From Euprymna scolopes (lineage: Eukaryota), in NCBI GenBank assembly GCA_053919585.1, contig CM132823.1: a DNA stretch of 64,000 bases; one strand, 5' to 3'. Positions 1 through 55,895 of the stretch are shown here, piece by piece. Made by a program: the position numbers and the translations under genes. The notes beneath the pieces are model-generated. The model saw only the letters and a list, made by a program, of their open reading frames with translations. It was not told where the DNA came from and made no database searches. Each line of letters starts with the position of its first letter. Position 1 is the stretch's first letter.

Positions 1-3000
1 CCTGATGAAGGAAAACAATGCTCAGGAGATATTGTAACTTGATGCAGGAAAACAATTATCAGGAGATATTTTTACTTGATGAAGGAACACAATGTTCAGG
101 AGATATTTTAATTTGATGAAGGAAAACAATGCTCAGGAGATAATTGAACTTAGAAGAAGGAAAACAATGCTCAGGAGATATTTGAACTTGATGAAAGAAA
201 AACAATGCTCAGGAGATATTTAACTTGATGAAGGAAAACAATGCTCAGGAGGTATTTTAGCATGCTGAAGGAAAACAATGCTCTGGAAATATTTAAACTT
301 GATGAAGGAAAACAATGCTCAGAAAATATTTAAACTTGATGAAAGAAAAAAATGCACAGGGGATATTTGAACTTGATGAACGAAAATAATTCTCAGGAGA
401 TATTTGAACTTGATGAACAAAAACAATGCTCAGGAGATATTTGTACTCGATGCAGGAAAACAATAATCAGGATCTATTTTAACATGATGAAAGAAAATAA
501 TTCTCAGGAGATATTTAAACTTGATGAAGGAAGACATTGCTCACGAGATATTGGAACCTGATTGTGGAAGAAATAATCAGGAGATATTTAAACTTTATGA
601 AGGAAAGCAATGCTCATGAGATATTTGAACTTGATGAAAGAAAGCAATGCGTAGGAGATATTTATACTTGATGAAGGAAAACAATGCTCAGGAAATATTT
701 GAACTTGAGGAAGGAAAACAATGCTCAGGAGATATTTAAACTTCCAGAAGGAAAACAATGATCAGGAGATATTTTAACTTGATAAAGGGAAACAATGCCC
801 ATTAGATATTTTAACTTGATGAAGGAAAACAATGCTCAGGAGGTATTTTAACTCGAGTGAGGAAAACAATGATCAGGAGATATTTGAATTTGATTAAAGA
901 GAACATTTCTCAGGAGATATTTTGCCTTGATAAAGGAAAATAATTCTTAGGAGATATTTTTACTTGATGCAGGTAAACAATGATCAGAGGATATTTTAAC
1001 TTGATGAAGGAAAACAATGTTCAGGAGATATGTGAATTTGATGAAGGAAAACAATGCTCAGTAGATATTTTACTTGATGAAAGAAAACAATGCTCTTGAA
1101 ATATTTTCACTTGATGAAGGAAAACAATGCTCAGCAAATATTTAAACTTGATGAAAGAATATAATGCTCAGGAGATATTTAAACTTGATGAAGGAAAACA
1201 ATTGTCAGGAGATATTTTAACTTGATGAAGGAAAACAATGTCCATTAGATATTGTAAATTGATGAAGGAAGACAATGCTCAGGAGATATTTTTACTTGAT
1301 GAAGGAAAACAATGTTCAGGAGATATTTTAACTTGATAAAGGAAAACAATGCTCAGGAAAGATTTTAACTTGATGAAGGAAATCAATGCCCATGAGATAT
1401 TTGAACTTAATGAAGGAAAACAATGCTCAGGAGATATTTTAACTCGAGTAAGGAAAACAATGATCAGGAGATATTTGAACTTGATTAAAGACAACATTTC
1501 GCAGGAGATATTTTAACTTGATGAAGGAAAATAATCGTCATGAAATATTTTCACTTGATGAAGGAAAACAATGCTTAGGAGATATTTTACCTTGATGAAG
1601 GAAAACAATGCTCAGGAGATATTTGAACCTGATGAAGGAAAACAATGCTCAGGAAATATTTTATCTTGATGCAGGAAAACAATGATCAGGAGATATTTTA
1701 ACTTGATGAAAAAAACAATGTTCAGGAGATATTTGAATTTGATGAAGGAAAACAATGCTCAGGAAATATTTCAACTTGTAGAAGGCCAACAATGCTCAGG
1801 AGATATGTGAACTTGTTGAAGGAAAACAATGCTCAGGATATATTGGAACTTGATGAAAGAAAACAATTCTCAGGATATATGTTTACTTGATGAAGGAAAA
1901 CAATGTTAAGGAGATATTTAAACTTCATGAAGGAAAACAATGCTTAGGAAATATTTTAACTTGATGAAGGAAAACAATGCTTAGGAAATAGTTTAACTTC
2001 ATGAAGGGAAACAATGCCTATTAGATATTTGAACTTGATGAAGGAAAACAATATTCAGGAGATATTTGAACTCGAGTGAAGAAAACAATGATCAGGAGAT
2101 ATTTGAACTGTATTAAAGAAAACATTTCTGCGGAGATATTTTAACTTGATGAAGGAAAATAATGCTCAGGAGATATTTTAAATTGATAAAGAAAAACAAT
2201 GCTCAGGAGATATTTTAACTTGATGAAGGAAACCAATGCTCATGAGATATTGGAACCTGATGAAGGAAAACAATGCTCAGGAGATATTGTAACTTGATGC
2301 AGGAAAACAAAAATCAGGAGATATTTTTACTTGATGAAGAAAAACAATGTTCAGGAGATATTTTAATTTGATGAAGGAAAACAATGCTCAGGAAATATTT
2401 GAACTTGATGAAGGAAAACAATGCTCAGGAGATATTTTACTTGATAAAGGAAAACAATGCTCAGGAGATATTTTTGCTTGATGAAGGAAAACAATGCTCT
2501 GGAAATATTTAAACTTGTAAAGGAAAACAATGCTCAGAAAATATTAAAAGTTGATGAAAGAAAACAATGCTCAGGAGATATTTTAACTTGATGAACGAAA
2601 ATAATGCTCAGGGGATATTTAACTTGATGAAGGAAAACAATGCTCAGGAGGTATTTTAGCTTGATGAAGGAAAACAATGCTCTGGAAATATTTAAACTTG
2701 ATGAAGGAAAACAATGCTCAGAAAATATTTAAACTTGATGAAAGAAAACAATGCACAGGGGATATTTGAACTTGATGAACGAAAATAATTCTCAGGAGAT
2801 ATTTGAACTTGATGAACAAAAACAATGCTCAGGAGATATTTGTACTCGATGCAGGAAAACAATAATCAGGATATATTTTAACATGATGAAAGAAAATAAT
2901 TCTCAGGAGATATTTAAACTTGATGAAGGAAGACATTGCTCACGAGATATTGGAACCTGATTGTGGAAGAAATAATACGGAGATATTTAAACTTTATGAA

Positions 3001-6000
3001 GGAAAGCAATGCTCATGAGATATTTGAACTTGATGAAAGAAAGCAATGCGTAGGAGATATTTTAACTTGATGAAGGAAAACAATGCTCAGAAAATATTTG
3101 AACTTGAGGAAGGAAAACAATGCTCAGGAGATATTTAAACTTCCAGAAGGAAAACAATGCTCAGGAGATATTTTAAATTGATAAAGAAAAACAATGCTCA
3201 GGAGATATTTTAACTTGATGAAGGAAACCAATGCTCATGAGATATTGGAACCTGATGAAGGAAAACAATGCTCAGGAGATATTGTAACTTGATGCAGGAA
3301 AACAAAAATCAGGAGATATTTTTACTTGATGAAGAAAAACAATGTTCAGGAGATATTTTAATTTGATGAAGAAAAACAATGCTCAGGAGATAATTGAACT
3401 TGATGAAGGAAAACAATGCTCAGGAAATATTTGAACTTGATGAAGGAAAACAATGCTCAGGAGATATTTTACTTGATAAAGGAAAACAATGCTCAGGAGA
3501 TATTTTTGCTTGATGAAGGAAAACAATGCTCTGGAAATATTTAAACTTGTAAAGGAAAACAATGCTCAGAAAATATTAAAAGTTGATGAAAGAAAACAAT
3601 GCTCAGGAGATATTTTAACGTGATGAACGAAAATAATGCTCAGGGGATATTTGAACTCGATGCAGGAAAACAATCATCAGGATATATTTTAACTTGATGA
3701 AAGAAAATAATTCTCAGGAGATATTTGAACCTGATTGTGGAAGAAATAATCAGGAGATATTCGAACTTTATGAATGAAACTAATGCTCATGAGATATTTA
3801 AACTTGATGAAAGAAAGCAATGCTTAGGAGATATTTATACTTGCTGAAGGAAAACAATGCTCAGGAAATATTTGAACTTGAGGAAGGAAAACAATGTTCA
3901 GGAGATATTTAAACTTCCTGAAGGAAAACAATTATCAGGATATATTTTAACTTGATGAATCGAAACCATGCCCATTAGATATTTTAACTGGATGAAGGAA
4001 AACAATGCTCAGGAGGTATTTGAATTTGATTAAAGAGAACATTTTTCAGGAGATATTTTGACTTGATAAAGGAAAATAATGCTTAGGAGATATTTTAAAT
4101 TGATGAAGGAAAACAATGCTCAGGAGATATTTTAAATTGATGAAAGAAAACAATGCTCAGGAAATATTTTAACTTGATGCAGGAATACAATGATCAAAAG
4201 ATATTTGAACTTGATAAAGGAAAACAATGTTCAGGAGATATGTGAATTTGATGAAGAAAAACAATGCTCAGGAGATATATGAACTTGATGAAGGCATACA
4301 ATGCTCAGGAGATATTTTTACTTGATGAAGGAAAACAATGTTCAGGAGATATTTAAACTTGATAAAGGAAAACAATGCTCAGGAAAGATGTTAACTTGAT
4401 GAAGGAAATCAATGCCCATGAGATATTTGAACTTGATTAAAGAAAACAATGCTCAGGAGATATTTTAACTCGAGTAAGGAAAACAATGATCAGGAGATAT
4501 TTGAACTTGATTAAAGACAACATTTCTCAGGAGATATTTTAACTTGATGAAGGAAAATAATGGTCAGGAGATATTTTAACTTGATGAAGGAAAACAATGC
4601 TCAGGAGATATTTTAACTTGATGAAGGAAAACAATGCTCAGGAGATATTTCAACCTGATGAAGGAAAACAATTCTCAGGATATATTTTAACTTGATGCAG
4701 GAAAACTATGCTCAGGAGATATTTTAACTTGATTAAGGAAAACAATGTTCAGGAGATATTTGAATTTGATGAAGGAAAACAATGCTCAGGAAATATTTCA
4801 ACTTGATGAGGGCCAACAATTCTCAGGAGATATTTGAACTTGATGAAGGAAAACAATGCTCAGGTGATATTTGAACTTGATGAAGGAAAACAATGCTCAG
4901 GAGATATTTGAACTTGATAAAGGAAAACAATGATCAGGAGATATTTGAACATTGTGAAGGAAAGCAATGCTCAGGATATATTGAAACTTGATGAAAGAAA
5001 ACAATGCTCAGGGTATATTTTTACTTGATGAAGGAAAAAAATGTTCAGGAGATATTTAAACTTGATGAAGGAAAACAATTCTCAGGAAATATTTTAACTT
5101 GATGAAGGAAAACAATGCTTAGGAAATATTTTAACTTGATGAAGGGAAACAATGCTCAGGAGATATTTGAACTCGAGTGAGGAAAACAATGATCAGGAGA
5201 TATTTTAACTGTATAAAATAAAACATTTCTGAGGAGATATTTTAACTTGATGAAGGAAAAAAATGCTCAGGAGATATTTTAAATTGATGAAGGAAAACAA
5301 TGCTCAGGAGATATTTGAACTTTATGAAGGAAACCAATGATCAGAAGATATTGGAACCTGATGAAGGAAAACAATGCTCAGGAGATATTGTAACTTGATG
5401 CAGGAAAACAATGATCAGGAGATATTTTTACCTGATGAAGGAAAACAATGTTCAGGAGATATTTGAATTTAATGAAGGAAAAAAATGCTCAGGAGATAAT
5501 TGAACTTGATGAAGGAAAACAATGCTCAGGAGATATTTGAACTTTGTGAAGGAAAACAATGCTCAGGAGATATTTAACTTGATGAAGGAAAACAATGCTC
5601 AGGAGATATTTTAGCTTTATGAAGGAAAACAATGCTCCGGAAATATTTAAACTTTATGAAGGAAAACAATGCTCAGAAAATATTTAAACTTGATGGAAGA
5701 AAACAATGCTCAGGAGATATTTGTAACTTGATGAAAGAAAATAATGCTCAGGAGATATTTTAACTTGATGAACGAAAACAATGTTCAGGAGATATTTGAA
5801 CTCGATGGAGGAAATCAATGATCAGGATATATTTTAACTTGATGAAAGAAAATAATTCTCAGGAGATATTTGAACTTGATGAAGGAAAAGATTGCTCACG
5901 AGATATTTTAACCTGATTGTGGTAGAAATAATCAGGAGATATTTAACTTGATGAAGGAAAACAATTCTCAGGAGATATTTGAACTTGATGAGGGAAAATA

Positions 6001-7980
6001 ATCGTCAGGAAATATTTTAACTTGATTCAGGAAAACAATGTTCAGAAGATATTTGAACTTGATTAAGGAAAACAATGCTCAGGACATATTTGAACTTGAG
6101 GAAGGAAAATAATTCTCAGGAGATATTTAAACTTCCTGAAGGAAAACAATTCTCAGGAGATATTTTAACTTGATGAAGGAAAACAATGCTCAGGAGATAT
6201 TTGAACTTGATGAAGGAAAGCAATGCTCAGGAGATATTTAAACTTGCTAAGGAAAACAATGCTCAGAAAATATTTTAGCTTGATGAAGGGAAACAATGCC
6301 CATTAGATATTTTAACTTGATGAAAGAAAACAACGCTCAGGAGGTATTTGAACTCGAGTGAGGAAATCAATGATCAGGAGATATTTTAATTTGATGAAAG
6401 AGAACATTTCTCAGGAGATATTTTAACTTGATAAAGGAAAATAATGCTCAGGAGATATTTTAAATTGATGAAGGAAAACAATGCTCAGGAGATATTTTCA
6501 ATTGATTAAGCAAAACAATGCTCAGGAGATATTTTAAATTGATGAAAGAAAACAATGCTCAGGAAATATTTTAACTTGATGCAGGAAAACAATGATCAGG
6601 AGATATTTTAACTTGATGAAGGAAAACAATGTTCAGGAGATATGTGAATTTAATGAAGGCATACAATGCTCAGGAGATATTTCAACTTGATGAAGGAAAA
6701 CAATGCTCAGGAGATATTTTAACTTGATGAAGGAAAACAATGCTCAGAAAATATTTAAACTTGATGAATGAAAACAATGCTCAGGAGATATTTTAACTCG
6801 ATGGAGGAAAACAATTATCAAGAGATATTTGAACTTGATGAAAGAAAAAAATTCTCAGGAGATATTTGAACTTGATGAAGGTAAACATTGCTCACGAGAT
6901 ATTTTAATCTGATGGTTGAAGAAATGCTCAGGAGATATATCAACTTTCTGAAGGAAAGCAATGCTCAGGAGATATTTTAACTTGATGAAAGAAAGCAATG
7001 CTTAGGAGATATGTAAACTTGATGGGGGAAAACAATTCTCAGGAGATATTTGAACTTGATGAAGGAAAACAATGCTTAGGAAATATTTGAACTTCATTAA
7101 GGAAAACAATGCTCAGGAGATATTTTAGCTGGATGAAGGAAAACAATGCTCAGGAGATATTTTTACTTGATGAAGGAAAGCAATATTCAGGAGATATTTT
7201 AACTTTATAAAGGAAAACAATACTCAGGAAATGTTTTAATTTGATGAAGGAAACAATGCCAATGAGATATTTGAACTTGATGAAGGAAAACAATGCTCAG
7301 GAGATAGTTTAACTCGAGTAAGGAAAACAATGATCAGGAGATATTGGAACGTGATTAAAGAAAACATTTCTCAGGATATATTTTAACCTGATTAAGGAAA
7401 ATAATGTTCAGGAGATATTTTAACTTGATGAAGGAAAACAATGCTTAGGAGATATTTTAACTTGATGAAGGAAAACAATGCTCAGCAGATATTTGAACCT
7501 GATGAAGGAAAACAATGCTCAGGAAATATTTTAACTTGATGCAGGAAAACAATGATCAGGAGATATTTTAACTTGATAAAGGAAAACAATGTTCAGGAGA
7601 TATTTGAATTGGATGGAGGAAAACAATGCTCAGGAAATATTTCAACTTGATGAAGGCCAACAATGCTAAGGTGATATTTGAACTTTATGAAGGAAAACAA
7701 TGCTCAGGAGATATTTGAACTTGATGAAAGAAAACAATGCTCAGGAGGTATTAAAACTTGATGAATGAAAACAATTTTCATGAGATATTTTAACTTGATG
7801 AAGGAAAACAATGTTAAGGAGGTATTTGAACTTGATGAAGGAAAACAATGCTCAGGAGATATTTGAACTTGATGAAGGAAAACAATGCTCAGGAGATATT
7901 TCAACTTGATGAAGGAAAACAATGCTCAGGAGGTATTTGAACTTGATGAAGGAAAACAATGCTCAGGAGATATTTCCACT
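1..7980. repeat. 37-bp satellite array (about 215 units), consensus CTTGATGAAGGAAAACAATGCTCAGGAGATATTT(G/T)AA
   Basis: Continuous 37-nt periodicity from the window start to an abrupt end near 7980. ORFs 352, 1279, 2751 and 7704 are translations of the repeat. Confidence 0.98.
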
Positions 7981-8292: not shown

Positions 8293-9527
8293 ATATTTAG
8301 TGTGCATTAATTTGAATATCATTGAGGCTTCACTCCAAAATGAGGTAATAAAAAACTTGTAATCGAGATGACAGAAAAGTCGAATTCTGAGAACCAAACT
8401 GAACAGGTCGGAATTTACAATGACGTTTGCATGCTAACTAGAATACATTTTTTTAATTGTAAGCTATTTCGGACGGAAATATGAAGTCGATGCGACCAAG
8501 ACGAAAGGGGAATTTTTGAAAATTGAAAGTATTGAAAAAGGGAGATTAAACGAGTTGCGTTGAACTTTAAAAATTGAAAGCATCAATAGATGGAAATATT
8601 AAAATGATTCGTGTCAAACATAGAAAATTTAAAGGGTCAAGAAATGGAAGATTGAAATGTGATTCGTGTCAGACTTTGAATCGTCATCTTATAATAGTGT
8701 ATTAGGATTCGATTGAATTTTTGTGTTTGAAAAGCTAAAAGTGTCTAGCAATGTTTGAGAAACTGGTATTCTCTAATAGTGTTTGAGAAGCTAGTAGCGT
8801 CCAGCAGTGTTTTAGAAGCTAGTAGTGTCTAGAAAAATTTGAGAAGCTAGTAGTATCTTACTGTAAAAAATTTGAGAAGCTAGTAGTATCTTACTGTATT
8901 TGAAGGGCTAGTAGTGTTTAGCAATGTTTGAGAAACTGGTAGTGCCTAACAGTGTTTGAGAGGCTAGTAGAGAGTAACAGTGTTTGAGTGGCTAATAATG
9001 TGTGGTGGTTTGGATACTAGTAGTGTCTAGTGGTGTTTGGGATACTAATAGTGTCTAGTGGTGTTTGGGATACTTGTAGTGTCTAGTGGTGTTTGGGATA
9101 ATAGTAGTGTCTAGTGGTGTTTGGGATACTAGTAGTGTCTAGTGGTGTTTGAGAAGCTAATAATCTTTAGCAGTGATTGAGAGGCTAGCAGAGCCTCGTG
9201 TTGTTTGAAAAGCTAGCAGAGCCTAGCATTGTTTTAAAAGCTAGCAGATTCTAGCAGTATTTGTGAGGTTAGCAGAGTCTAACGGTGTTGGAAGTTGATG
9301 TGATTGCCAATCATGGCATGGGGTTATGAGGTTATCTTTAAGGACTAGAGGGTAATGTAGTTTGACATGCATTAATTTGCATATCAATGAGGCTTTGCCC
9401 CCAAAATGACGTAATAAATAAACTGAAATCGAGATGACAGGAGAATCGAGTTCTGAGAACCGTACTGAACAGGTTGGAATTTATAATGCCGTTTGAATAC
9501 CGACTACAATACATTTCTTTTCAATTA
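8293..9527 (+). mobile_element. Non-autonomous TRIM-like LTR element
   Basis: Diverged direct repeats of about 170 bp at ~8293-8461 and ~9356-9527 (gcattaatttg..atcgagatgacag..ttctgagaacc..ctgaacagg..aataca). AGCTATTTCGG follows the first repeat (8462-8472). A purine-rich tract precedes the TGTAG start of the second repeat. No ORF. Outer boundaries approximate. Confidence 0.7.
8735..9290. repeat. 28-bp minisatellite (agtagtgtctagtggtgtttgggatact and variants) inside the TRIM-like element
   Basis: Tandem periodicity, best conserved at 9019-9150. Confidence 0.9.
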
Positions 9528-20415: not shown

Positions 20416-20699
20416 NNNNNNNNNNNNNNNNNNNNNNNNNNNNNNNNNNNNNNNNNNNNNNNNNNNNNNNNNNNNNNNNNNNNNNNNNNNNNNNNNNNNN
20501 NNNNNNNNNNNNNNNNNNNNNNNNNNNNNNNNNNNNNNNNNNNNNNNNNNNNNNNNNNNNNNNNNNNNNNNNNNNNNNNNNNNNNNNNNNNNNNNNNNNN
20601 NNNNNNNNNNNNNNNNNNNNNNNNNNNNNNNNNNNNNNNNNNNNNNNNNNNNNNNNNNNNNNNNNNNNNNNNNNNNNNNNNNNNNNNNNNNNNNNNNNN
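20416..20699. other. Assembly gap (N run), flanked on the left by a LINE restriction-like endonuclease remnant (WYKH...ENE..KIL..DIQTD, minus strand)
   Basis: Run of N; ORF 20202-20753 spans it. Confidence 0.95.
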
Positions 20700-41579: not shown

Positions 41580-42750
41580 ATTGGAACCTTCTCCTGAAAC
41601 TGTATCGCCCCCGTCTGCGTTATGCGAGCATCACCTAGGGCTCTGATGGCATCATAGCCTAGGAGCAGGTAAAAGCTGGCGGTTTCTCGAGTACTACCAG
41701 CGCTTCAATATTAGCTGAATTTCCAGTTTTAGTGTGAATGTTCACAGTGCCCACCCCGCAACATGTCCGCGTCGCTCCACTAAGGGTGGTTAATCTAGTA
41801 GTCTTCTTCTTCCGAGTGCGGCAGAGGCCCGCACTCACTACGGTGCGAGAGCACCCAGAGTCGAAGAGTGCCCAATCTTTTTACATCGGTAGCAGCGAAT
41901 AGCTGTCAGTCGCCGCCAGCAGTTCCTCGCAATGTGGCCCTGACACATGACTTTACTGTGCAGGACGGGCCCCTGGGATAGTCTATCCTCATTTAATGCA
42001 CGCTGTGCAGCAGCGACTACCGGTTCTCCCATCTCATAAGTATTGTTCATCACGGTCCTGGCCCGGTCTACCAGATCGTTAAGGGACAATGAAGCTATGC
42101 TTGAGCTAGCCTGCAGGAGTTGCTTTGCTCCGGTTGAGAGCCCTGCCAAAAATTTGCATGCCAAGGCTGGCTCAGGCAGCCCACCAAACAACACCATCAA
42201 TTTCGTCAGCTTGGCCAAATAAACGTCGACAGTTTCACCAGGATGCATGGTTCTTGCCTCAAATTGCTCCCAAGCAGTGGCGGGGTCAATAGCGAACGCT
42301 TTGTATAATGCCGCCTTGATCCTTTTATAATCCTGTTTTTCCTCAGGACTAAGCTGTTGATATACTGCAAAAGCCCTGCCAAACAGATGTAGAGGAACAA
42401 CATGTTCAATGTTCTTCATGCTAGACAACAGGCAATGTAGTTCCACCTTCTCCACCCAATCAAGTACTGGGGTCAAGCCATCGAATTCCGGTATTAATTT
42501 AAGGCCGAATTTGTCCCCTATTATGTCGAAATAGCTTGATGTTAAATGGGCTGGTAAACAGCAAAACGAAATAAACCAAATACAATACGCAAAAGTCCAG
42601 CTAGAATTCGTCACTGAAACTTTCTCTCTCAACTTCCAGCACGTCTCTCCCCACTGCCTCTGCCAACAGACATTTTATCAGAAAACTGACCCCATTCTAT
42701 TTGCATACATGTGCAGTGGAAGATGAGATCTGGTGAGATTCTATGAAACT
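41580..42750 (-). mobile_element. Truncated Gypsy-like LTR element (LTR, PBS, gag with zinc knuckles, protease remnant)
   Basis: gag KFGLKLIPEFDG..DWVEKVEL..GETVDVYL, with CCHC-type GHIARNC and CYRCKKIGH. LTR inner end (CA) at 42537, followed by AGCTATTTCGAC. Outer LTR end uncertain. Confidence 0.85.
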
Positions 42751-43259
42751 ACACCTTATAAATCCATGGCTGCCATCTTTAAATTCTCTTTCTCTCAGAT
42801 CGTATCTGAAGGTAAGTTGTATGACCGCACGACATACACACGGGAGTGGCGCTTTCTTCTTTGATTATTTCATTCAACTCTATATGAAGTCAACAGGGAT
42901 TTCTTTAACCACCACCAGGAAGCAACTGTTGCAAGAACTAATTTATTATTATTGGGGGGGGGGAAATCTTCAACTGAAGGTTATCAGGTTATTGAGGTTC
43001 TATGACAACGTTAGACATTTAATAACAGCTGAACCATCCTACCCTAATTCAGAATCGGTAAAAGCATTTAAAATTTTAGAAAGAAATTGAAAAAAGCCTT
43101 ATCACACTTCATATTTTAAACATTATATCTTAATTTTAATCTTTGATGCCTTTCTAGAAAGAACTCTATAGTGGAGCAATATTTTGACTGCAAAATTTTA
43201 ACTCCCGCTGTCGAGAACCAATGAGAGTACCTATCTGCAAAAAGAGAATGACAACTTAC

Positions 43260-43353
43260 TACAGAATCATTTGTTGCGAATACTCGGCCTAACCCACAAG
43301 CATACAGTCGACATGATACACCCAACTCGAAACCATTATTGGTGGAAATATAC
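43260..43353 (-). CDS. Candidate upstream exon (YISTNNGFELGVSCRLYACGLGRVFATNDSV)
   Basis: ccatcag acceptor, GTAAGT donor, 94 nt, phase 2 to 0, compatible with 34456. No domain recognised. Confidence 0.3.
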
Positions 43354-44469
43354 CTGATGGGGGAGAGGTAACTGATTATCCAATCAGGACGAACCAAGGT
43401 GTGATGGACTGGACGACGATTCGTTAGCTGGGACAGGCAGGCGTGTCCCTACCTACCCCAACCTGGCATACATAAATTCTTGCAGAAAAAATAAATTTTT
43501 GGAGAGATTTTAAATGAGTTTGTGTAGATAGTCTAGAGTGAATCGACACGAAGATACTGTCACCCGGTCTCCTCCCCACTATTCGATAAGCACTCGTTCA
43601 TTAATTGATTGGAAGCAAAAATAGGTTATTAAAAAAAAACTGACTAAGGTCCTGTTGCAGTTAATAGAAAGAAAAAACTTTCAAACGAGCTTTTATTTTT
43701 TATTTTGATTCTTCTGTGAAAAAATGTACATACTTAATATTTTTATTGTTCTCTTTTGTGAATAATTAATTTCATATGATGCGTCGGTTATTATTATTGT
43801 TGATATTTACAAGTGACTTTAAAAAGAAGAAACAACAGAATTTAATGATCTTTCTTTTCAGCAGAGTAAAGAGGTTAGCATTGATCATCCACTAATGTAC
43901 CCCTTGTCATATCAACCCTATCTAGTGAAAGCGACTGGAGCTGCGTTGCAGAATTTTGGTGGGGGTCTTAATCACCTAGAACTACACATCGTGTAGCTTG
44001 TTGTTAACTATGGATTGAAAACATTAGATGTCCGCGAGAGGAACTCGATCTACAGGGATACTTGACTATCATATTTGTAACCAGCGGCGTTAACACCTAG
44101 GATTACACCTAGTGTAATGTAGGGCAGGTCATATGATTATATTCTTTTTTAAAAAAGTAATTGCAACAAACAGAGAAATTTTGTTCCAGCTATTGAACTT
44201 TATTCAAACTATTTTCTTAAAAGAATGTTCAAACTGTTAATTTTTTTCTTTTCTTCCTGTTCTATTCACAAATAACAAAAAAGATATTTGTTTAGGTGGT
44301 AATTTTTTGATAATTTCAAAGAACAGTTAGTCCATAATTTTTGTTTTTGTTGTTTCTATTTAATGAAAGCATTGGTTTGTTGTTTAAATTTGTATTGTGT
44401 CTAAACAGCAGCATTGAATTTCATATCACTGCTTCCATATGCGGACGATACAACATTGCCGTTCGCGCA

Positions 44470-45035
44470 GGTAGATGCATTCTCTGAAAAATACACTGTT
44501 TCTCCATAAAGCAGTAAATCATGTCGTAGAATGGCATGCCTGCACCTCTAGACAAAAAGTAGTGCGGAACTTAATTATAAACTCGTCTCCAGACATTACA
44601 TATGAGAAATTAAAAACAGAGATATTGAAGCGTAATACTGCGTCAGAGGAAAGCAGATTCCATATGCTCATGCAGAACGAGCACTTAAATGACAGACCCC
44701 TACAGAGTTTCTAAGACGGTTAAAGGAACTGTTGAACCTTTTTGCAGAGAAACACAACAATCATACAATTTTTTTTTGCGTTGGCCTCTTGAAGTCAAAG
44801 CTATACTGGCCCCAAACCTGGAGGAGAACACTGTTGAACAAATGGCTACTATGACAGTAAAATATTCGAGAATTCTTACTTAAACACAGCCAGCAACCCT
44901 GAACAATTCAGACTGTAACAGCTGTTCGGGGTTAAGCAGCAATTGAGTTCGGGTAATGATGAAATATTAACAAATATTGACTCGTTAACACACAAGTTTG
45001 ATGTTTCATGTTAGGAATCGAAGTCGTAATAATTC
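44470..45035 (+). mobile_element. Gypsy (CsRn1-like) gag remnant, interrupted by the 45036-49444 element
   Basis: YEKLKTEILKRNTASEESRF..L..EHLNDRP..FLRRL, ending RNRSRNNS. Confidence 0.65.
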
Positions 45036-48000
45036 TGTATCGAATTCAACTTCAATCGTCACCAATGCTCACAATAGTAACACAATAACCTCTCACATGT
45101 CCTGTTGTCTCAAATAACAAATATACCTCCGATTTTCACACAATAAATCAGTTTATCTCTATGTATCTCAATTCCAATCTTGGGATATCCGCTATTGCCT
45201 GGGATCCCTAAAAGTAATCTTAGTATACTTATGCGGTCTCCCACAAGTCCCTGGGAGGTTTGATCTCTCAAATGGGGAGCAAAACGCTCCCTTAGGTCAA
45301 TTAGGTTACACAGGTTCAGGTTCTGATTCAGACTCTGGTTCTGATTCAGATTCTGGTTCTGCTTTCGAGTCTGGTTCTGGTTTCGGGTCTGGTTCTGATT
45401 CTGTTTCTGCTGCGTCAGATGAACTATAATCATTACTCTCTGGTCTGTTGATTTCGTTCATCAGTAGCTCATCACTTTAGCATTCATTGCTCACCTCTAT
45501 AGTTGTATGATGTACCTCAGAAACTGGGCAAAGATCGCGCACATGATGCGGTGTTCCGTCAACTAGCACCGACTGCTGGCTGATCACCCCAGAGATTCGT
45601 CCTCACTTGAATTTGGTGGTGCACTGGTTTCCAGGTGGTGTCACCCAAACTCGATCCCCTACCTCATATTTGACATGTCTTTTCTGGTTGACTGTCTGTG
45701 CAGCATCAATTCCCTTTAGTCTAACACGATATATGTACATGGCATTGGCCGGCGCTGTTGTAGGTAATTTCCCATCCTTTGGTGTGACGTTATACCAATA
45801 CGTGGCCTCCATAATGGTACATTGCTTTCTGGCAGCAATTCTCTTAATGCTGCTGTGGCTCCTCTCAGCAATGCCATTCCTTGATGGCACATGAGTGCAT
45901 TGCAGCCGTAGTCAAACACCCTATTCATCTAACAGCTGCTGGACTTGTTGACTGCAAAAAACAGCATCGTTATCCGTCAAGATCTCTTCTGGCGCACCCC
46001 ACTCAAAAAAGATGGACGACAAGATGCGAACAACACTTGCTGAGTCCTGTCTAATCATGTATCGTCATACAGCAAAACGTGTGGGTCCACAATCGATAAG
46101 AGTTAGAAAGGGTTTACCACTGTAATGGGTAATGTCCATCGCCACCCACTGCCACACCTTCTTGACGTCAAATCATCCTTTTCGCTATTGCTCTGATGCA
46201 GAATCAATAGACTGACACGCCTCACACCTGCCTGACATCTACCTTTGTCACTGCTGAGTCCACACGCCTCGCAAAATACACTGTTCTCTTGACACCTGGA
46301 TGTCCACTCTGTGTATGAATTTTCTGTATTTGACATGGGCTAATCACGCCAATTGCAACTGCACAAGATCGAGCAGTGTGCTCCACACCCATCTTCATGG
46401 CTCCATACCATCTATGAAGTACACGGGTTAGTTGGTTGGCATTATTACAATGTGATGTTACCAGCGTTACCCCACTAATAGTCCATACTCAGAAATCAGA
46501 CTCTTCAGCATGTCTAGCCTTCACCGGATCAACATCTTGCTGGCTGCCTTAGTGCGGATTGTTGTCCACCTTGAAAGCGTGTCAGACACCCAGTGGTAGA
46601 TGCAGAGAATCCGTGTACAGGTGCAGTTTCTTCGATTGCCATTGCAGTGCGAGATTTATTCCCTTTACAACATTGTCCAGCTCTTCTAAGTTGATGTGTT
46701 GAGCATCAATCATGGGTCGCAGCCAACATGTGTCTTCAAACACATTCCCTGCTTGCTTTAATGCGACTCCTAATTCCAATGAACTAGTATCGACCCCCAA
46801 ATTTAAGTGGTCTGCATCAACTGTAGTACTTACCAACACAACAAACGCCCTCGTGTTTGTGCCTTGTATAGGCATGCGCGACAACAAAACTTGGGTTTTT
46901 ATAAGCGGAAGTCTCGAGGTTGTCAGGAATCTACAGGCGCATGAGCAAGAGAAGGGATTGAGATAGTGGTATAAAGGCAGGTCGAGTGAGAAGATTGTTG
47001 TTTTTGTTGTCATTGGACGTTACAGTGACGCATGCGTTAGCAGGTGATTAAGGAGGCGGTTTATTTTTGTGTGTCAAGTCGCGCACCTCGGTGAAGGTCA
47101 TATAAATCGTTCACCTCGGTGAAGGTGAAGGTCATATCAACACACCATTTTTACACGGGCAGTGTTTTCCTTGTTGACTCTCTCCAGGGTCTCAGTTACC
47201 ATCAGAGTTAGAAGAGCATCGTCAAGCACATCATCCCAACCTGTGGTTACCAAATTCGCTCTGCATTTGATGACACCCACAGCTACACGGAGCCAGCCAC
47301 AGGCTGGTCAGTGTCCAATAAGTTTCCTACATCAGGACAAAATTGTCCGCCTTGTAACAACCTCAGAGATGCCTGGAATCCCACTGCCATGCCTCCATTA
47401 TAGGGTGCTGTCTTCCTCACAGACGTCTAATGCCAATGCACACGCCCCATCCCTCAGACGTTCAGGTTCTTGCACTGCAGACCAAACTGAGCCAATTTTT
47501 CCCTGACACACGATGCAGATTTTATGTCCTCATTGATGTACACATCGTCAATATAGGCTGATGTTGCGTCCTCAATGGTCTTTTCTTGAGACAGCACCGC
47601 ATTCACAATGGTCTTCATGATCTGCGGTGCCACATTCAGACCAAAGCCGAGTCATGTTAGGCAGTACCTCTGATCCCGGACCACACTGACTGGAACGGCC
47701 ATAGCATCTCATCTACTGCAAATAGGCCTTCCGCAGGTCTAATATTGACACATTGGAGCCCTTTTGGCGCCATTCCCTCAGTTTGCTGGCGCACACGTAA
47801 GCCTCAATGTACTGGTTGAGCTCACGATAATTCAGCACTGCTCTTACTTTTGACTTGTTATGCTGGATAACCGCCATTAAGGGTATCAGACCCTTGGGCG
47901 GACCAAGCTTCTCAGGGTAGTGGATCAGCCATCCATCTCGGATCCACACCTTAAGCCTCATCAGGCATAAGGTATTCTATGACGCGATTCTTTAATTCAG

Positions 48001-49444
48001 TTGGTGCCTTTCCCTTGGTCCACTTCCATGATGCAGTCCAGGCCTGCTGGTTATAGTCATAGTCCACCTTAGATCAGGGCGAACGATGTGGATTACAGCA
48101 CACACCGGGTTTTTCAAAAAGCTCATGCTCACATCTCTTTCGATTGTCACTCCCCCCTCCAGTGCCTTGATAGCATCGTAGCCCAGCAGTACGTCGAACC
48201 CCGACAAATCTCCTCGCGTCACCAACACATTAATTTCTATGGCCACACCAGAGTCCGTGTGGACCTTCGCGGTTCCGGCTCCACAGCATGCTTGTGTCTC
48301 GCCACCTATTGTGGTGACTTTAATGTTCTTTTTAGTCCAGGTCCAACACAATCTGGCACTCATGATGGTATGTGAGCAGCCGGAGTCGAGAAGAGATGAG
48401 CAGGGCACTCGGTTCACGTACACAGTTATCGTAGGTTGCGCGTCACTTCGATCTTGTCTGGGGAGCAGGGCGGCGCTGACATCCTGCCCCCTGATGCGTT
48501 TTCCACACAGTTTTGGGCTAGGTGCCCTATGCCACCACATTGGAAACAGCGTAGTCGCCCCCACCCTTTATCAGTGCAGCTTCTTGCAAAATGACCTCAC
48601 CAACCACAACGGTAACATCTTCCATTAGTCACGGGGCTCAGACTGGGAATTGCTTTTGTCGCCATCACAACTGGTTCCCCCAGGTCCTCCTCATCCCTTA
48701 TGATAGCCCGGGCGCATTCCATCAAGTGCTCCATAGGCGTTGCGGACACACTAGTAGAGGCTCTCAACAATTGCTTAACACGGGTGGGAAGGCTGGCTAC
48801 AAATGCATATGCCAATGTCCTCTCCGACACTCCATTATCAAACAGCACAGCAAGTTTCTTCAATTCCGCAAATACCACATCCACGGTTTCTCCTGGCATA
48901 AGCTTCCTGGGGGCGAATCTTTCATAAGCCGTGCAAGGATCCATTGCAAATGCCTTGTACAGTGCATTTTTATAGTGGTCACATTAGCCTTCTCGATGGC
49001 ACTAAGTTGCGGATACACACTCAAAGCGCCCCCAGTCAATCTCAGGGGAATCACAGTGTGCACTCTCTTTACCTCACAGAGATTACAGGTCAACTCGACC
49101 CTCTCAACTCAGTCAACGACAGATGTGGACCCATCAAATTCTGGAATCAGTTTCAGATCAAATTTTGAGTCGGTCATTTTTCACAGCAATAGCCGAAATA
49201 GCTTGTATCGAATTCAACTTCAATCATCACCAACGCTCGCAATAGTAACACCATAACCTCTTGACTGTAAACGACACTGTTCCTTCCTCTCACTCAAGCT
49301 TGCTTTTATGCAGTTTTTCACCCTGTCTCATTTGCATGTGTGCCCTCTGTTTTCTCCTGATCTCCTGAACCACATAGTCGAAACGACAACACTCAACTCG
49401 ACGTCTCGCAAAGAGACACAATGAATAATGACAAACTTATTACA
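45036..49444 (-). mobile_element. Compact Gypsy-like LTR retrotransposon (gag-PR-RT-RNase H-IN), defective
   Basis: gag MTDSKFDLKLIPEFDG; PR LLDSGCSHT; RT RAVLNYRELN, LDLRKAYLQ, LGFGLNVAP, YIDD; RNase H VDTSS, QHINLEELD, LYTDS; IN GHPGV, MDITH, TDND, NGIAERSH. Terminal repeats share 57 bp (45036-, 49204-). ATTC flanks both ends (45032-5, 49445-8). Confidence 0.9.
46822..47136. mobile_element. Solo LTR inserted at the RT/RNase H junction
   Basis: 315-bp insert starting TG and ending CATA, flanked by a TCAAC duplication (46817-21, 47137-41). Removing it restores WCVD-ADHLNLGVDTSS. Confidence 0.75.
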
Positions 49445-49579
49445 ATTCTAAGTAGAAAAATATTGGGAAAAGAATGCCAAAAATAATCATCCGATTCATA
49501 TGTAATGATGAATGATGCTCAACATGTATTTCCTAACTTTAATGTCCACCTCAGTAATTGGTGTGGTTTCTCTACTTAC

Positions 49580-49679
49580 ACAGACACAGCTGGTGGCATA
49601 ACACATAGCTTCTCTATATACCATTCCCTTTCACAGACAGTTAAGTTTCCGCCCTGATGGAGTAGTATATTTTCTCTTC
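49580..49679 (-). CDS. Candidate upstream exon (coding or 5' UTR/start)
   Basis: ccacag acceptor, GTAAGT donor, 100 nt. Open as phase 1 to 2 (RENILLHQGG...CVMPPAVSV, fits 43353), or as ATG-initiated MVYREAMCYATSCVC ending in phase 0 (fits 34456). Confidence 0.3.
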
Positions 49680-50103
49680 CTGTGGAACAGTGTGCAAAAG
49701 ACACTACTGAATGGTAGAATGCAGCAATTGAAGCACATGTTCCCACACGGAAATACGTTACCAAACCACACTCTCCACAGTTGTGCAACTGCTATCGCGC
49801 AACAGCAGTATGGATTTCGCAGAGTTATCGGAATAAGTTGAATACAAATAGGCAAAAATTTGTAGAAGTTAGAAATAATTGTAAGACAGAAATAACCGCA
49901 GCCAAGAGAAGGCATTCCGAAGTCATGAAAAAACGCATCGAATTATAGAAATTATGGAAAATTTATAGCAGTATAGTAACAGCTTTAACGAAGAAAAAGC
50001 TTGGGAGGGGATATTGGGGTGGTGCCCCTACAGATTCTGACAATGGACTGTTCATGACGTCACTTCCGGTTCATAGGTTCTGCTTTTCTGCACTGAACCC
50101 GAA

Positions 50104-50189
<86 letters not shown>

Positions 50190-50365
50190 GTAACTTTAGT
50201 TTGTCTTTCAGTTGAGCGGAGTTCCTAATCAACTATTTCTGTATTTTCTGTTTAATATAATATTCATTTCATTGTTTCTGAATCTTTTCGTTATTCTTTC
50301 CAACATTTACTTCATAATAACTGGTGACGAGGTTTCGAAAACTCATGAGAAATAACTGAATATTA

Positions 50366-50631
50366 AAATACCCGAGTGTTCTCATAAGAATTGAGGTAGC
50401 CGGAAATACCCGAGTGTTCTCATAAGAATTGAGGTAGCCGGAAATACCCGAGTGTTCTCATAAGAATTGAGGTAGCCGGAAATACCCGAGTGTTCTCATA
50501 AGAATTGAGGTAGCCGGAAATACCCGAGTGTTCTCATAAGAATTGAGGTAGCCGGAAATACCCGAGTGTTCTCATAAGAATTGAGGTAGCCGGAAATACC
50601 CGAGTGTTCTCATAAGAATTGAGGTAGCCGG
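50366..50631. repeat. Seven perfect tandem copies of a 38-bp unit (aaatacccgagtgttctcataagaattgaggtagccgg)
   Basis: Identical head-to-tail units with no spacers. Confidence 0.97.
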
Positions 50632-51133
50632 AATTCAAATCGAAAATTCGAAACGAAATTACGTGAGGAATTCACAAATAGACAAATCGGCGTTAACTAG
50701 AAAAGCCCCCCCCCCCAAAAAAAAACCATTCTGCCCACATGTTGCGTGACTGTAATTTGTTTTAAAGCAGACTTTTGCTGGTATGTTATGCAAATGAGTT
50801 CTTTTTTTATTGTCAAAAAACCTCTAGGAATTTGAAACAGGACAATTTTTGTTCCAGAGTTTTTTTTCAACTCGGGTTTTTGAAATGTATGCGAATTTTT
50901 TCTTGACTGTTCATTGAAAATGAAAGTTTTTGTTTTTGTTAAACAGTAAAAAGAAATGAAATTCTTTTGCTTATAGATTAGCACATTACTATTCATTTAT
51001 ACAAATATTCTCTTTTTTCTATTTCTTCGTCTAGAATTTTGTCTCACAGTAGAACATTTTGAAGAAGGAAAATCCCCTCCCTATTTTATTTTACTTTCAA
51101 AGTTTTATACCTGGACACCCCAAGTGATAAGAA

Positions 51134-55711: not shown

Positions 55712-55895
55712 NNNNNNNNNNNNNNNNNNNNNNNNNNNNNNNNNNNNNNNNNNNNNNNNNNNNNNNNNNNNNNNNNNNNNNNNNNNNNNNNNNNNNNNNN
55801 NNNNNNNNNNNNNNNNNNNNNNNNNNNNNNNNNNNNNNNNNNNNNNNNNNNNNNNNNNNNNNNNNNNNNNNNNNNNNNNNNNNNNNNNNNNNNNN
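55712..55895. other. Assembly gap (N run)
   Basis: Run of N. Confidence 0.99.

What the first reader, a model, noticed from the sequence alone, without database searches (positions are those of the whole stretch)
49192..49203. LTR primer-binding site complementary to the 5' end (nt 1-12) of tRNA-Phe: candidate priming by a short 5' tRNA fragment
Seen: on the element's sense (minus) strand the 5' LTR ends ...GATACA and is followed with no spacer by AGCTATTTCGGC, 15 nt before the gag ATG. There is no TGG-starting PBS. Established knowledge (recalled): metazoan tRNA-Phe(GAA) begins GCCGAAATAGCTCAG, so this is a 12/12 complement of its first 12 nt. A canonical Phe PBS would read TGGTGCCGAAAC. Known exceptions to 3'-CCA priming are half-tRNA(iMet) priming (copia, Ty5) and 11-nt self-priming (Tf1). 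Inference: this lineage primes reverse transcription with a roughly 12-nt 5' tRNA fragment, perhaps released by its own RNase H as in Tf1. The motif sits in the same position in two other elements here with unrelated LTRs, which argues against chance. I cannot confirm that this is undescribed.
Basis: partly seen in the sequence, partly recalled or inferred. Interest (0 to 1): 0.9.

Follow-up and report, generated by a model that had tools for sequence, protein, structure and literature searches.

The report
Retroelement primer site matching tRNA-Phe start
A decayed retrovirus-like mobile element, and its relatives in crustaceans and parasitic worms, carries a 12-base site where DNA copying must begin that pairs with the first 12 bases of tRNA-Phe rather than a tRNA tail, pointing to a way of starting reverse transcription that I could not find described.

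Summary
On the minus strand the LTR ends ...GAATTCGATACA at 49204. It is followed with no spacer by AGCTATTTCGGC (49203-49192), and the gag ATG lies 14 nt further on. A 3' LTR remnant in the window (45092-45036) ends at the same ACA and then diverges, which fixes the boundary.

The host tRNA-Phe(GAA), read from this genome, begins GCCGAAATAGCT, so the complement is 12/12. The 12-mer occurs 9,280 times in the genome, against 99 for a reversed control.

The same block sits directly after the LTR's CA in two other families in this window. It also does so in a barnacle, an unnamed marine animal, three decapods, two Trichuris suis families and Trichinella murrelli. It reads AGCTAT-NNN-GGC. Only the three bases facing tRNA positions 4-6 vary, and they vary by host.

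No part of any LTR complements the site, so Tf1-type self-priming is not supported.

The best reading (about 0.7) is that minus-strand synthesis is primed by a 12-nt 5' fragment of tRNA-Phe cut after U12. Priming itself, the cleavage, and the tRNA-Phe sequences of the other hosts are not shown.

Four earlier follow-ups of this scan reached the same reading on other pieces of this genome. I found no prior description in the papers I could search.

The parts
49192..49203 (-). Primer-binding site AGCTATTTCGGC, a 12/12 complement of nt 1-12 of the host tRNA-Phe(GAA)
   Evidence: Sequence. Host tRNA-Phe. 16 of 30 genomic copies keep it exactly, the rest differ by 1-3 changes.
49204..49374 (-). 5' LTR remnant (positions 154-325 of a roughly 325-nt LTR, TGTAATAC...GATACA). 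The upstream part is replaced by unrelated sequence.
   Evidence: BLAST of a complete LTR against the window. Alignment of 30 copies. LTR pairs.
45311..49177 (-). Degraded internal region: gag (ATG 49177-49175, stop after 22 codons), protease, RT, RNase H, integrase, all broken by stops and frameshifts
   Evidence: Open pieces. RVP hit. Less decayed genomic copies give RVP, RVT_1, DUF7047, RNase_H/RVT_3, Integrase_H2C2 and rve.
45036..45092 (-). 3' LTR remnant (last 57 nt of the LTR). It ends ...GAATTCGATACA and is not followed by the motif.
42525..42536 (-). Same site in a second family: AGCTATTTCGAC (1 mismatch), directly after ...TTAACATCA
   Evidence: The gag KFGLKLIPEFDG follows and hits Retrotrans_gag.
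42537..42885 (-). 5' LTR of the second family, with TATAAGG and an ATGCAAAT motif. No 3' LTR in the window, so LTR status rests on genomic copies that begin at one common point.
   Evidence: Genome search: at least 2,219 candidates, most matches starting at query positions 16-19. No BLAST similarity to the family-1 LTR.
41841..42512 (-). gag of the second family (open piece, two CCHC knuckles)
   Evidence: Groups with family-1 gag in the tree.
8462..8473 (+). Same site in a short non-coding LTR element: AGCTATTTCGGA (1 mismatch), directly after the 5' repeat
8303..8461 (+). 5' terminal repeat of the short element
   Evidence: Direct repeat 8303-8458 / 9368-9526, 84% identity. Sequence.
9368..9527 (+). 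3' terminal repeat of the short element, not followed by the motif

Best explanation
The 12-mer is the minus-strand primer-binding site of a retrovirus-like LTR element lineage (gag, protease, RT, DUF7047, RNase H, integrase). It pairs with nucleotides 1-12 of cytoplasmic tRNA-Phe.

Shown:
- its position directly after the LTR's terminal CA;
- the exact match to this host's tRNA-Phe;
- conservation of position and length across families and phyla;
- variation confined to the three bases opposite tRNA positions 4-6;
- the absence of a self-primer.

Inferred mechanism:
1. The element RNA, whose site contains a copy of the tRNA's own 3' acceptor strand (UUUCGGC), invades the acceptor and D stems. 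The zinc-knuckle nucleocapsid probably helps.
2. The tRNA is cut between U12 and C13. The cut could be made by the element's RNase H acting on an RNA duplex, as in Tf1, or by a host nuclease, or a pre-made short 5' fragment could be used.
3. The new 3'-OH at U12 lies opposite the first base after U5 and is extended into U5-R.
4. During plus-strand synthesis RT copies the RNA primer until it runs off tRNA nucleotide 1.

The run-off would explain why the conserved block is exactly 12 nt and why conservation stops at the base pairing with G1.
For: - Position: LTR ...CA followed by the motif in the window and in five two-LTR genomic copies with a polypurine tract and 5-bp target duplications.
- Match: the host tRNA-Phe(GAA) gene starts GCCGAAATAGCT, with about 695 genomic matches to its first 15 nt. 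The 12-bp RNA duplex is -18.7 kcal/mol.
- Abundance: 9,280 copies against 99 for the control. The decapod-type variant has only 71 copies here against 437 for its control.
- Three families in the window.
- Other hosts, always directly after ...CA and 3-14 nt before gag:
  - barnacle AGCTATTTCGGC;
  - marine metagenome animal AGCTATTTCGGC;
  - Macrobrachium, Petrolisthes and Scylla AGCTATCTAGGC;
  - T. suis AGCTATCGAGGC and AGTTATCGAGGC, the latter keeping a G-U pair;
  - T. murrelli AGCTATCGCGGC.
- The polypurine tract CAGGGGGGAG and 5-bp duplications are shared.
- tRNA-Phe(GAA) genes with nt 4-6 = GAA, GCG, TAG and TCG all exist in metagenomes. The TAG one lies on a metazoan contig whose nearest named relative is krill.
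- The T. suis family P0080 groups with the T. murrelli element in the gag tree (86/82), yet shares CGA with the other T. suis family.
- No self-primer.
Against: - No experiment or read data show priming, a 12-nt fragment, or the cut.
- The tRNA-Phe genes of the decapods, Trichuris and Trichinella could not be fetched, so the covariation is a prediction, not a result.
- Roughly 25 of the 64 possible triplets occur in metagenomic tRNA-Phe genes, so finding TAG, TCG and GCG there is weak support. The single TCG gene has a 4:69 mismatch.
- The gag tree is almost unresolved, so host tracking cannot be cleanly separated from descent.
- Known 5' tRNA fragments are 14 nt or longer. A fragment longer than 12 nt would have an unpaired 3' end, because the LTR must end in CA.
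- All copies sampled in this genome are dead.
Confidence: 0.7

Rival explanations
1. Self-priming as in Tf1/sushi: a stretch of the element's own RNA (the 5' end of R or another part) folds back on the site and is cut to give the primer. On this reading the likeness to tRNA-Phe is coincidental.
For: The site has no TGG and is 12 nt long, close to the 11-nt Tf1 duplex. That a tRNA-independent mechanism exists is stated in PMC5371799.
Against: In four elements from three hosts, the best complement to the site anywhere in the LTR is no better than for shuffled sites: 9-10 of 12 pairs including G-U, with 52-100% of shuffles as good. A self-primer would have no reason to equal the host tRNA-Phe 5' end, nor to stay constant across families whose LTRs are not alignable.
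Confidence: 0.04
2. The site binds a different small RNA whose 3' end reads ...GCCNNNAUAGCU-3'. Candidates are a processed non-tRNA RNA, or another tRNA with a similar 5' end in some hosts (Lys-UUU and Tyr also carry AUAGCU at positions 7-12, from my recollection). So the primer is not tRNA-Phe in every host.
For: The other hosts' tRNA-Phe genes were not read. Only the present host is verified.
Against: - The match here is 12/12 and ends exactly at tRNA nucleotide 1.
- GCC at positions 1-3 together with AUAGCU at positions 7-12 fits tRNA-Phe in all variants.
- tRNA-Phe(GAA) genes with each required triplet exist.
- No RNA with such a 3' end is known to me.
Confidence: 0.12
3. The block is a conserved leader signal with another role, such as packaging, dimerisation, a tRNA-binding decoy or a target of host small RNAs. 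Priming would occur from some other, unrecognised site.
For: No functional data. Pairing with a tRNA 5' end cannot prime without a cut.
Against: It occupies the one position where every LTR retroelement has its primer site, with 0 nt between it and the LTR's CA. No other conserved block and no TGG site lies between the LTR and gag, a gap of only 15-30 nt in all elements. The short non-coding element at 8303-9527 keeps it while lacking all genes.
Confidence: 0.1
4. Chance resemblance.
For: None beyond the shortness of the motif.
Against: A given 12-mer matches the complement of one tRNA's first 12 nt with probability 6e-8, or about 3e-6 over some 50 tRNA species. The motif also recurs at the same place in at least 11 elements of 8 hosts.
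Confidence: 0.01

Closest known systems
Half-tRNA priming of copia (Drosophila) and Ty5 (yeast)
   Same: The primer is a 5'-derived piece of a host tRNA made by internal cleavage, not the native CCA end (PMC5371799). The site has no TGG.
   Different: Those elements use initiator tRNA-Met cut in the anticodon loop. Their site pairs with an internal stretch, and they are Ty1/copia elements with integrase before RT. Here the tRNA is Phe, the pairing covers the extreme 5' end (nt 1-12), the inferred cut is in the D stem, and the gene order is RT-RNase H-integrase.
Tf1/sushi self-priming
   Same: A very short primer duplex (11 nt in Tf1, 12 nt here) whose 3' end has to be created by cutting an RNA-RNA duplex. 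No TGG.
   Different: Tf1 uses the first 11 nt of its own transcript and no tRNA (PMC5371799; the 11-nt and RNase H details are from my recollection of Levin 1995/1996). Here no LTR sequence complements the site, and the partner is a host tRNA.
Canonical tRNA 3'-end priming (retroviruses, Ty1, Ty3, Belpaoviridae)
   Same: A site immediately after U5, a host tRNA as partner, and a polypurine tract before the 3' LTR.
   Different: Canonical sites start TGG and pair with up to 18 nt of the tRNA 3' end. Belpaoviridae use tRNA-Arg or tRNA-Gly (PMC8742986). A canonical Phe site would read TGGTGCCGAAAC, and it is absent here.
Element lineage itself: unnamed clade of metazoan LTR elements carrying Pfam DUF7047
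   Same: The window element and its relatives share RVT_1, DUF7047, RVT_3/RNase_H, Integrase_H2C2 and rve, plus a gag beginning F-D-L-K-L-I-P-E-F-D-G.
   Different: They lack the Ty3/gypsy RT_RNaseH domains and the BEL/Pao Peptidase_A17, DUF1758 and DUF1759 domains. One Trichinella spiralis copy has DUF5641. The integrase and RT are nearest to retroviral ones among solved structures. I could not assign a published clade name.

Membership tests
LTR retroelement (Ortervirales-type) | Two LTRs ending TG...CA, target-site duplication, polypurine tract before the 3' LTR | tested here: met
   LTR TGTAATAC...GATACA, target duplications CCTCT and TTTAA, polypurine tract AGGGGGGAG in genomic copies. 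In-window 3' remnant.
LTR retroelement (Ortervirales-type) | gag with zinc knuckles, aspartic protease, RT, RNase H, integrase | tested here: met
   Pfam hits on pieces of the window and of genomic copies. Intact relatives.
Canonical 3'-tRNA-primed elements | Site beginning TGG, complementary to the CCA 3' end of a tRNA | tested here: not met
   No TGG between the LTR and the gag ATG in the window or in relatives.
copia/Ty5 half-tRNA priming | Site complementary to the anticodon stem-loop region of initiator tRNA-Met | tested here: not met
   The site is the complement of tRNA-Phe nt 1-12.
copia/Ty5 half-tRNA priming | Primer is a 5' tRNA fragment produced by internal cleavage | not testable with these tools
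   Required by the geometry, since nt 12 must carry the 3'-OH, but no RNA or cDNA data are available.
copia/Ty5 half-tRNA priming | Ty1/copia gene order (integrase before RT) | tested here: not met
   The order is RT, DUF7047, RNase H, integrase.
Tf1/sushi self-priming | First ~11 nt of the transcript (start of R, inside the LTR) complementary to the site | tested here: not met
   The best LTR complement is no better than for shuffled sites in four elements.
BEL/Pao (Belpaoviridae) | Peptidase_A17, DUF1758 and DUF1759 domains; 18-nt site for the 3' end of tRNA-Arg or tRNA-Gly | tested here: not met
   None of these Pfam families hit. The site differs from the ICTV description. DUF5641 is seen in only one T. 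spiralis copy.
Ty3/gypsy (Metaviridae) | RT_RNaseH / RT_RNaseH_2 domain after RT; Retrotrans_gag; Integrase_H2C2 | tested here: inconclusive
   Retrotrans_gag (E 4e-6) and Integrase_H2C2 hit. RT_RNaseH does not hit; DUF7047 plus RNase_H/RVT_3 appear instead.
tRNA-Phe 5'-end primed lineage (proposed here) | The site covaries with the host tRNA-Phe 5' end | tested here: inconclusive
   Verified for this host only. The required variants do exist as tRNA-Phe(GAA) genes in metagenomes.

The most novel reading that the evidence does not exclude
A widespread metazoan retroelement lineage (mollusc, barnacle, decapods, trichinellid nematodes) starts reverse transcription from the first 12 nucleotides of tRNA-Phe. 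The tRNA is cut in the D stem after annealing. The primer site co-evolves with the host's tRNA-Phe acceptor stem. This would be a third kind of non-canonical priming, beside half-tRNA and self-priming.
Probability: 0.6. Interest if true: 0.85.

Novelty: new variant of a known kind. Interest (0 to 1): 0.8.

Why it matters
Since the 1970s the rule has been that LTR retroelements prime from a tRNA 3' end. Only two exceptions are well studied: half-tRNA priming and self-priming.

A lineage that uses the extreme 5' end of a tRNA would add a third exception. It would raise several questions:
- How is a 3'-OH made inside a folded tRNA?
- Does a retroelement RNase H cut RNA duplexes more generally?
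- Are very short 5' tRNA fragments used as primers?

It also has practical consequences. Annotation tools that look for TGG sites matching tRNA 3' ends will report these very abundant elements as lacking a primer site. Host defences based on 3' tRNA fragments would not see them.

The host-specific triplet gives a clean, cheap computational test. It may also work as a marker of which host an element is adapted to.

Tried and rejected
- **Self-priming.** I scanned whole LTRs of four elements for a complement of the site against 500 shuffles each. There was nothing above chance.
- **tRNA genes of the other hosts.** No tRNA gene lay in the seven fetched loci. A run search with the TAG-type tRNA-Phe returned only coded organism names, so it could not link the variant to decapods. 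A text search for the predicted 5' ends in papers found only human tRNA-Phe or irrelevant hits.
- **Metagenome contig with the TAG-type tRNA-Phe (L066).** It could be placed only roughly, through an SLC12A9 exon. Its nearest named relative is krill at 69%, with insects, an ostracod and nematodes near 60%.
- **Further relatives.** Three look-ups gave no DNA because the sample file was too large. A viral-contig scan with a gag alignment found nothing. The Trichinella spiralis locus L059 has a chimeric gene model and no recognisable site.
- **tRNA against leader RNA.** A long-range duplex prediction gave an uninformative all-over pairing, and I discarded it.
- **Literature.** Searches for an earlier description found none. 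Levin 1995 and the Schorn and Martienssen review were not held.
- **Small-RNA or RNA read tests.** Not attempted.

Full report
**What is in the window**

On the minus strand the sequence reads ...GAAGTTGAATTCGATACA, then AGCTATTTCGGC (49203-49192). Fourteen bases follow, and then the gag ATG at 49177-49175. The gag opens MTDSKFDLKLIPEFDG and hits a stop after 22 codons.

Downstream lie broken pieces of protease, RT, RNase H and integrase. No TGG occurs between the repeat and the ATG.

A BLAST of a complete LTR from a genomic copy against the window gives two results:
- The 5' LTR here is only its last 171 nt (49374-49204).
- A 57-nt remnant of the 3' LTR lies at 45092-45036.

That remnant ends with the same ...GAATTCGATACA and then continues GAATTATT. 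The LTR end, and so the zero-spacer position of the motif, is therefore fixed within the window itself.

**The family in the genome**

The window is part of a 5.9-Gb assembly. A DNA search with the LTR-site-gag stretch gave 3,882 candidates.

Five of twelve extended copies have both LTRs. Each LTR is about 325 nt and runs TGTAATAC...GATACA. The tract AGGGGGGAG stands directly before the 3' LTR. The 5-bp target duplications include CCTCT and TTTAA. At every 3' LTR, similarity ends exactly at ACA.

Thirty copies aligned over the junction are 92-95% alike. Sixteen keep the exact 12-mer and the others differ by one to three changes, as expected for neutral decay. All sampled copies are broken by stops.

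Less decayed pieces give RVP, RVT_1, DUF7047, RNase_H/RVT_3, Integrase_H2C2 and rve. Among solved structures the integrase is nearest to retroviral integrases.

**The tRNA**

The pattern GCCGAAATAGCTCAG occurs 695 times in the genome, largely in tandem arrays. ARAGORN calls these tRNA-Phe(GAA). The gene starts GCCGAAATAGCTCAG and ends GGGTTTCGGCA.

The site is therefore a 12/12 complement of nucleotides 1-12. A canonical Phe site would be TGGTGCCGAAAC.

Base 13 of the tRNA (C) cannot pair with the last LTR base (A). On the other side the pairing ends at tRNA nucleotide 1.

The 12-mer occurs 9,280 times in the genome, against 99 for the reversed control.

**Other families in the window**

At 42536-42525 (-) a second family has ...TTAACATCA | AGCTATTTCGAC, followed by a gag reading KFGLKLIPEFDG. 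Its LTR shows no BLAST similarity to the first and has at least 2,219 genomic candidates.

At 8462-8473 (+) a short non-coding element has AGCTATTTCGGA directly after the left repeat. The element is bounded by 84%-identical repeats at 8303-8461 and 9368-9527.

**Other hosts**

The gag of a genomic copy finds 112 relatives. Named ones come from decapods, a barnacle, Trichuris and Trichinella. The Trichuris suis pol finds hundreds more with the same DUF7047 architecture.

In every locus I could read, the block stands directly after an LTR ending in CA and 3-14 nt before gag:

| Host | Locus | Site |
|---|---|---|
| Amphibalanus (barnacle) | L182 | AGCTATTTCGGC |
| Ocean-metagenome animal | L183, L184 | AGCTATTTCGGC |
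| Macrobrachium | L055 | AGCTATCTAGGC |
| Petrolisthes | L060 | AGCTATCTAGGC |
| Scylla | L061 | AGCTATCTAGGC |
| T. suis, family 1 | L056 | AGCTATCGAGGC |
| T. suis, family 2 | L058 | AGTTATCGAGGC |
| T. murrelli | L057 | AGCTATCGCGGC |

The Macrobrachium and T. suis elements have clear LTR pairs and 5-bp duplications (ATTAC, GTTTC). Before the 3' LTR they carry the same tract, CAGGGGGGAG, as the elements of this genome.

Nothing next to the block is conserved except the CA.

**Pattern of variation**

Across these elements the block is AGCTAT-NNN-GGC. All differences between hosts fall in the three bases that would face tRNA positions 4-6, in the middle of the acceptor stem. That is where tRNA-Phe differs between taxa.

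The one change outside the triplet is C to T in a T. suis family. It turns a G-C pair with G10 into a G-U pair.

In this genome the decapod-type 12-mer is at background level: 71 copies against 437 for its control.

In a gag tree, which is mostly unresolved, the T. suis family P0080 groups with the T. murrelli element (86/82). Yet it shares its triplet with the other T. suis family and not with T. murrelli. This hints that the triplet follows the host rather than the element's descent.

**Attempt at the covariation test**

I could not reach the tRNA genes of the other hosts.

A scan of metagenome contigs for GCCNNNATAGCTCAGTTGGGAGAGC found tRNA-Phe(GAA) genes with many triplets at positions 4-6. 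They include GAA, GCG, TAG and TCG.

The TAG gene (L066) would pair perfectly with the decapod site. It lies beside SLC12A9 exons on a metazoan contig whose nearest named relative is krill at 69%.

This shows the required tRNAs exist. It does not tie them to the hosts, and about 25 of the 64 triplets were seen, so the support is weak.

**Rival: self-priming**

In Tf1-type elements the start of the transcript, inside the LTR, complements the site. I slid each 12-mer along the whole LTR of four elements from three hosts, allowing G-U pairs. The best score was 9-10 of 12, no better than for shuffled 12-mers. Self-priming from the LTR is not supported.

**Mechanism (inferred)**

For a tRNA paired through nucleotides 1-12 to prime synthesis into U5, nucleotide 12 must carry a free 3'-OH. 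So the tRNA must be cut between U12 and C13, or a pre-made fragment must be used.

The site contains UUUCGGC, a copy of the tRNA's own 3' acceptor strand. Annealing therefore amounts to strand invasion of the acceptor stem and continues into the D stem. The 12-bp duplex is worth about -18.7 kcal/mol.

From my recollection of yeast tRNA-Phe, the only modified base in nt 1-12 is m2G10, which still pairs.

Copying the primer during plus-strand synthesis would run off at nucleotide 1. That gives a 12-nt site, in contrast to the 18 nt set by m1A58 in canonical priming.

Who makes the cut is unknown. It could be the element's RNase H, as in Tf1, or a host nuclease.

**Comparison with what is known**

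An open review lists the exceptions to 3'-end priming (PMC5371799):
- Tf1, which is tRNA-independent;
- copia, which uses a half-tRNA;
- Ty5, which uses initiator tRNA-Met cleaved in the anticodon loop.

Belpaoviridae are described with an 18-nt site for the 3' end of tRNA-Arg or tRNA-Gly (PMC8742986).

The present case works like copia and Ty5 in using a 5'-derived tRNA piece. It works like Tf1 in the short duplex that needs a cut. It fails the defining sequence features of all three.

Ten full-text searches found no description of a site complementary to a tRNA 5' end. Subscription literature and Repbase notes were not searchable, so prior description cannot be excluded.

**Earlier notes of this scan**

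Four follow-ups on other pieces of this genome reached the same reading and named similar hosts. A first-reader note flagged the short element at 8293-9527. These notes are not independent evidence. Everything stated above was re-derived here.

**Verdict**

It is a new variant of non-canonical retroelement priming, with a sharp prediction still to be tested. Confidence that the block is the primer site is about 0.9. Confidence that the partner is the 5' end of tRNA-Phe, used as a roughly 12-nt primer, is about 0.7.

Noticed in passing
window 1-7800: A long satellite with a 37-bp period (about 200 units, 60-89% alike) fills the first 7.8 kb.
   Followed up: no
window 50328-50671: A tandem array of 38-bp units, the central copies 100% identical.
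   Followed up: no
window 42500-49700; genome contig C41 at about 26.2, 29.3, 30.35 and 32.06 Mb: Both retroelement copies of the window recur with their flanks, at 95-100% identity, at four places on the same chromosome-scale contig. The window therefore lies in a large segmental duplication, and these four copies are not independent insertions.
   Followed up: partly
genome contigs C18 (about 100.09-105.5 Mb) and C28 (about 101.7 Mb); loci L043-L054: tRNA-Phe(GAA) genes are hugely amplified, with about 695 matches to the first 15 nt. They include a regular array with a 219-bp period on C28.
   Followed up: partly
L016-type copies; L055 12605-12633; L056 12744-12772: The polypurine tract CAGGGGGGAG before the 3' LTR is identical in elements of the mollusc-type host, a prawn and a whipworm, although their LTRs are unrelated in sequence.
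   Followed up: partly
window 49320-49330 and 42700-42712: The two LTR families share a short CACATG..ATGCAAAT motif some 40-60 nt downstream of their TATA boxes. It is an octamer-like element that may belong to the promoter or leader.
   Followed up: no
window 45113-45476: The region between the integrase and the 3' LTR remnant encodes a low-complexity acidic repeat (SEPE/PEPD-like) in one frame. The same feature appears in a genomic copy (L039, weak Trypan_PARP hit).
   Followed up: no
L059 10972-11622: A Trichinella spiralis relative has a DUF5641 domain after the integrase. That domain is otherwise typical of BEL/Pao elements, which hints at where the lineage belongs.
   Followed up: no
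window 20416-20699 and 55712-55895: Two runs of N (284 and 184 bases), left as they are.
   Followed up: no
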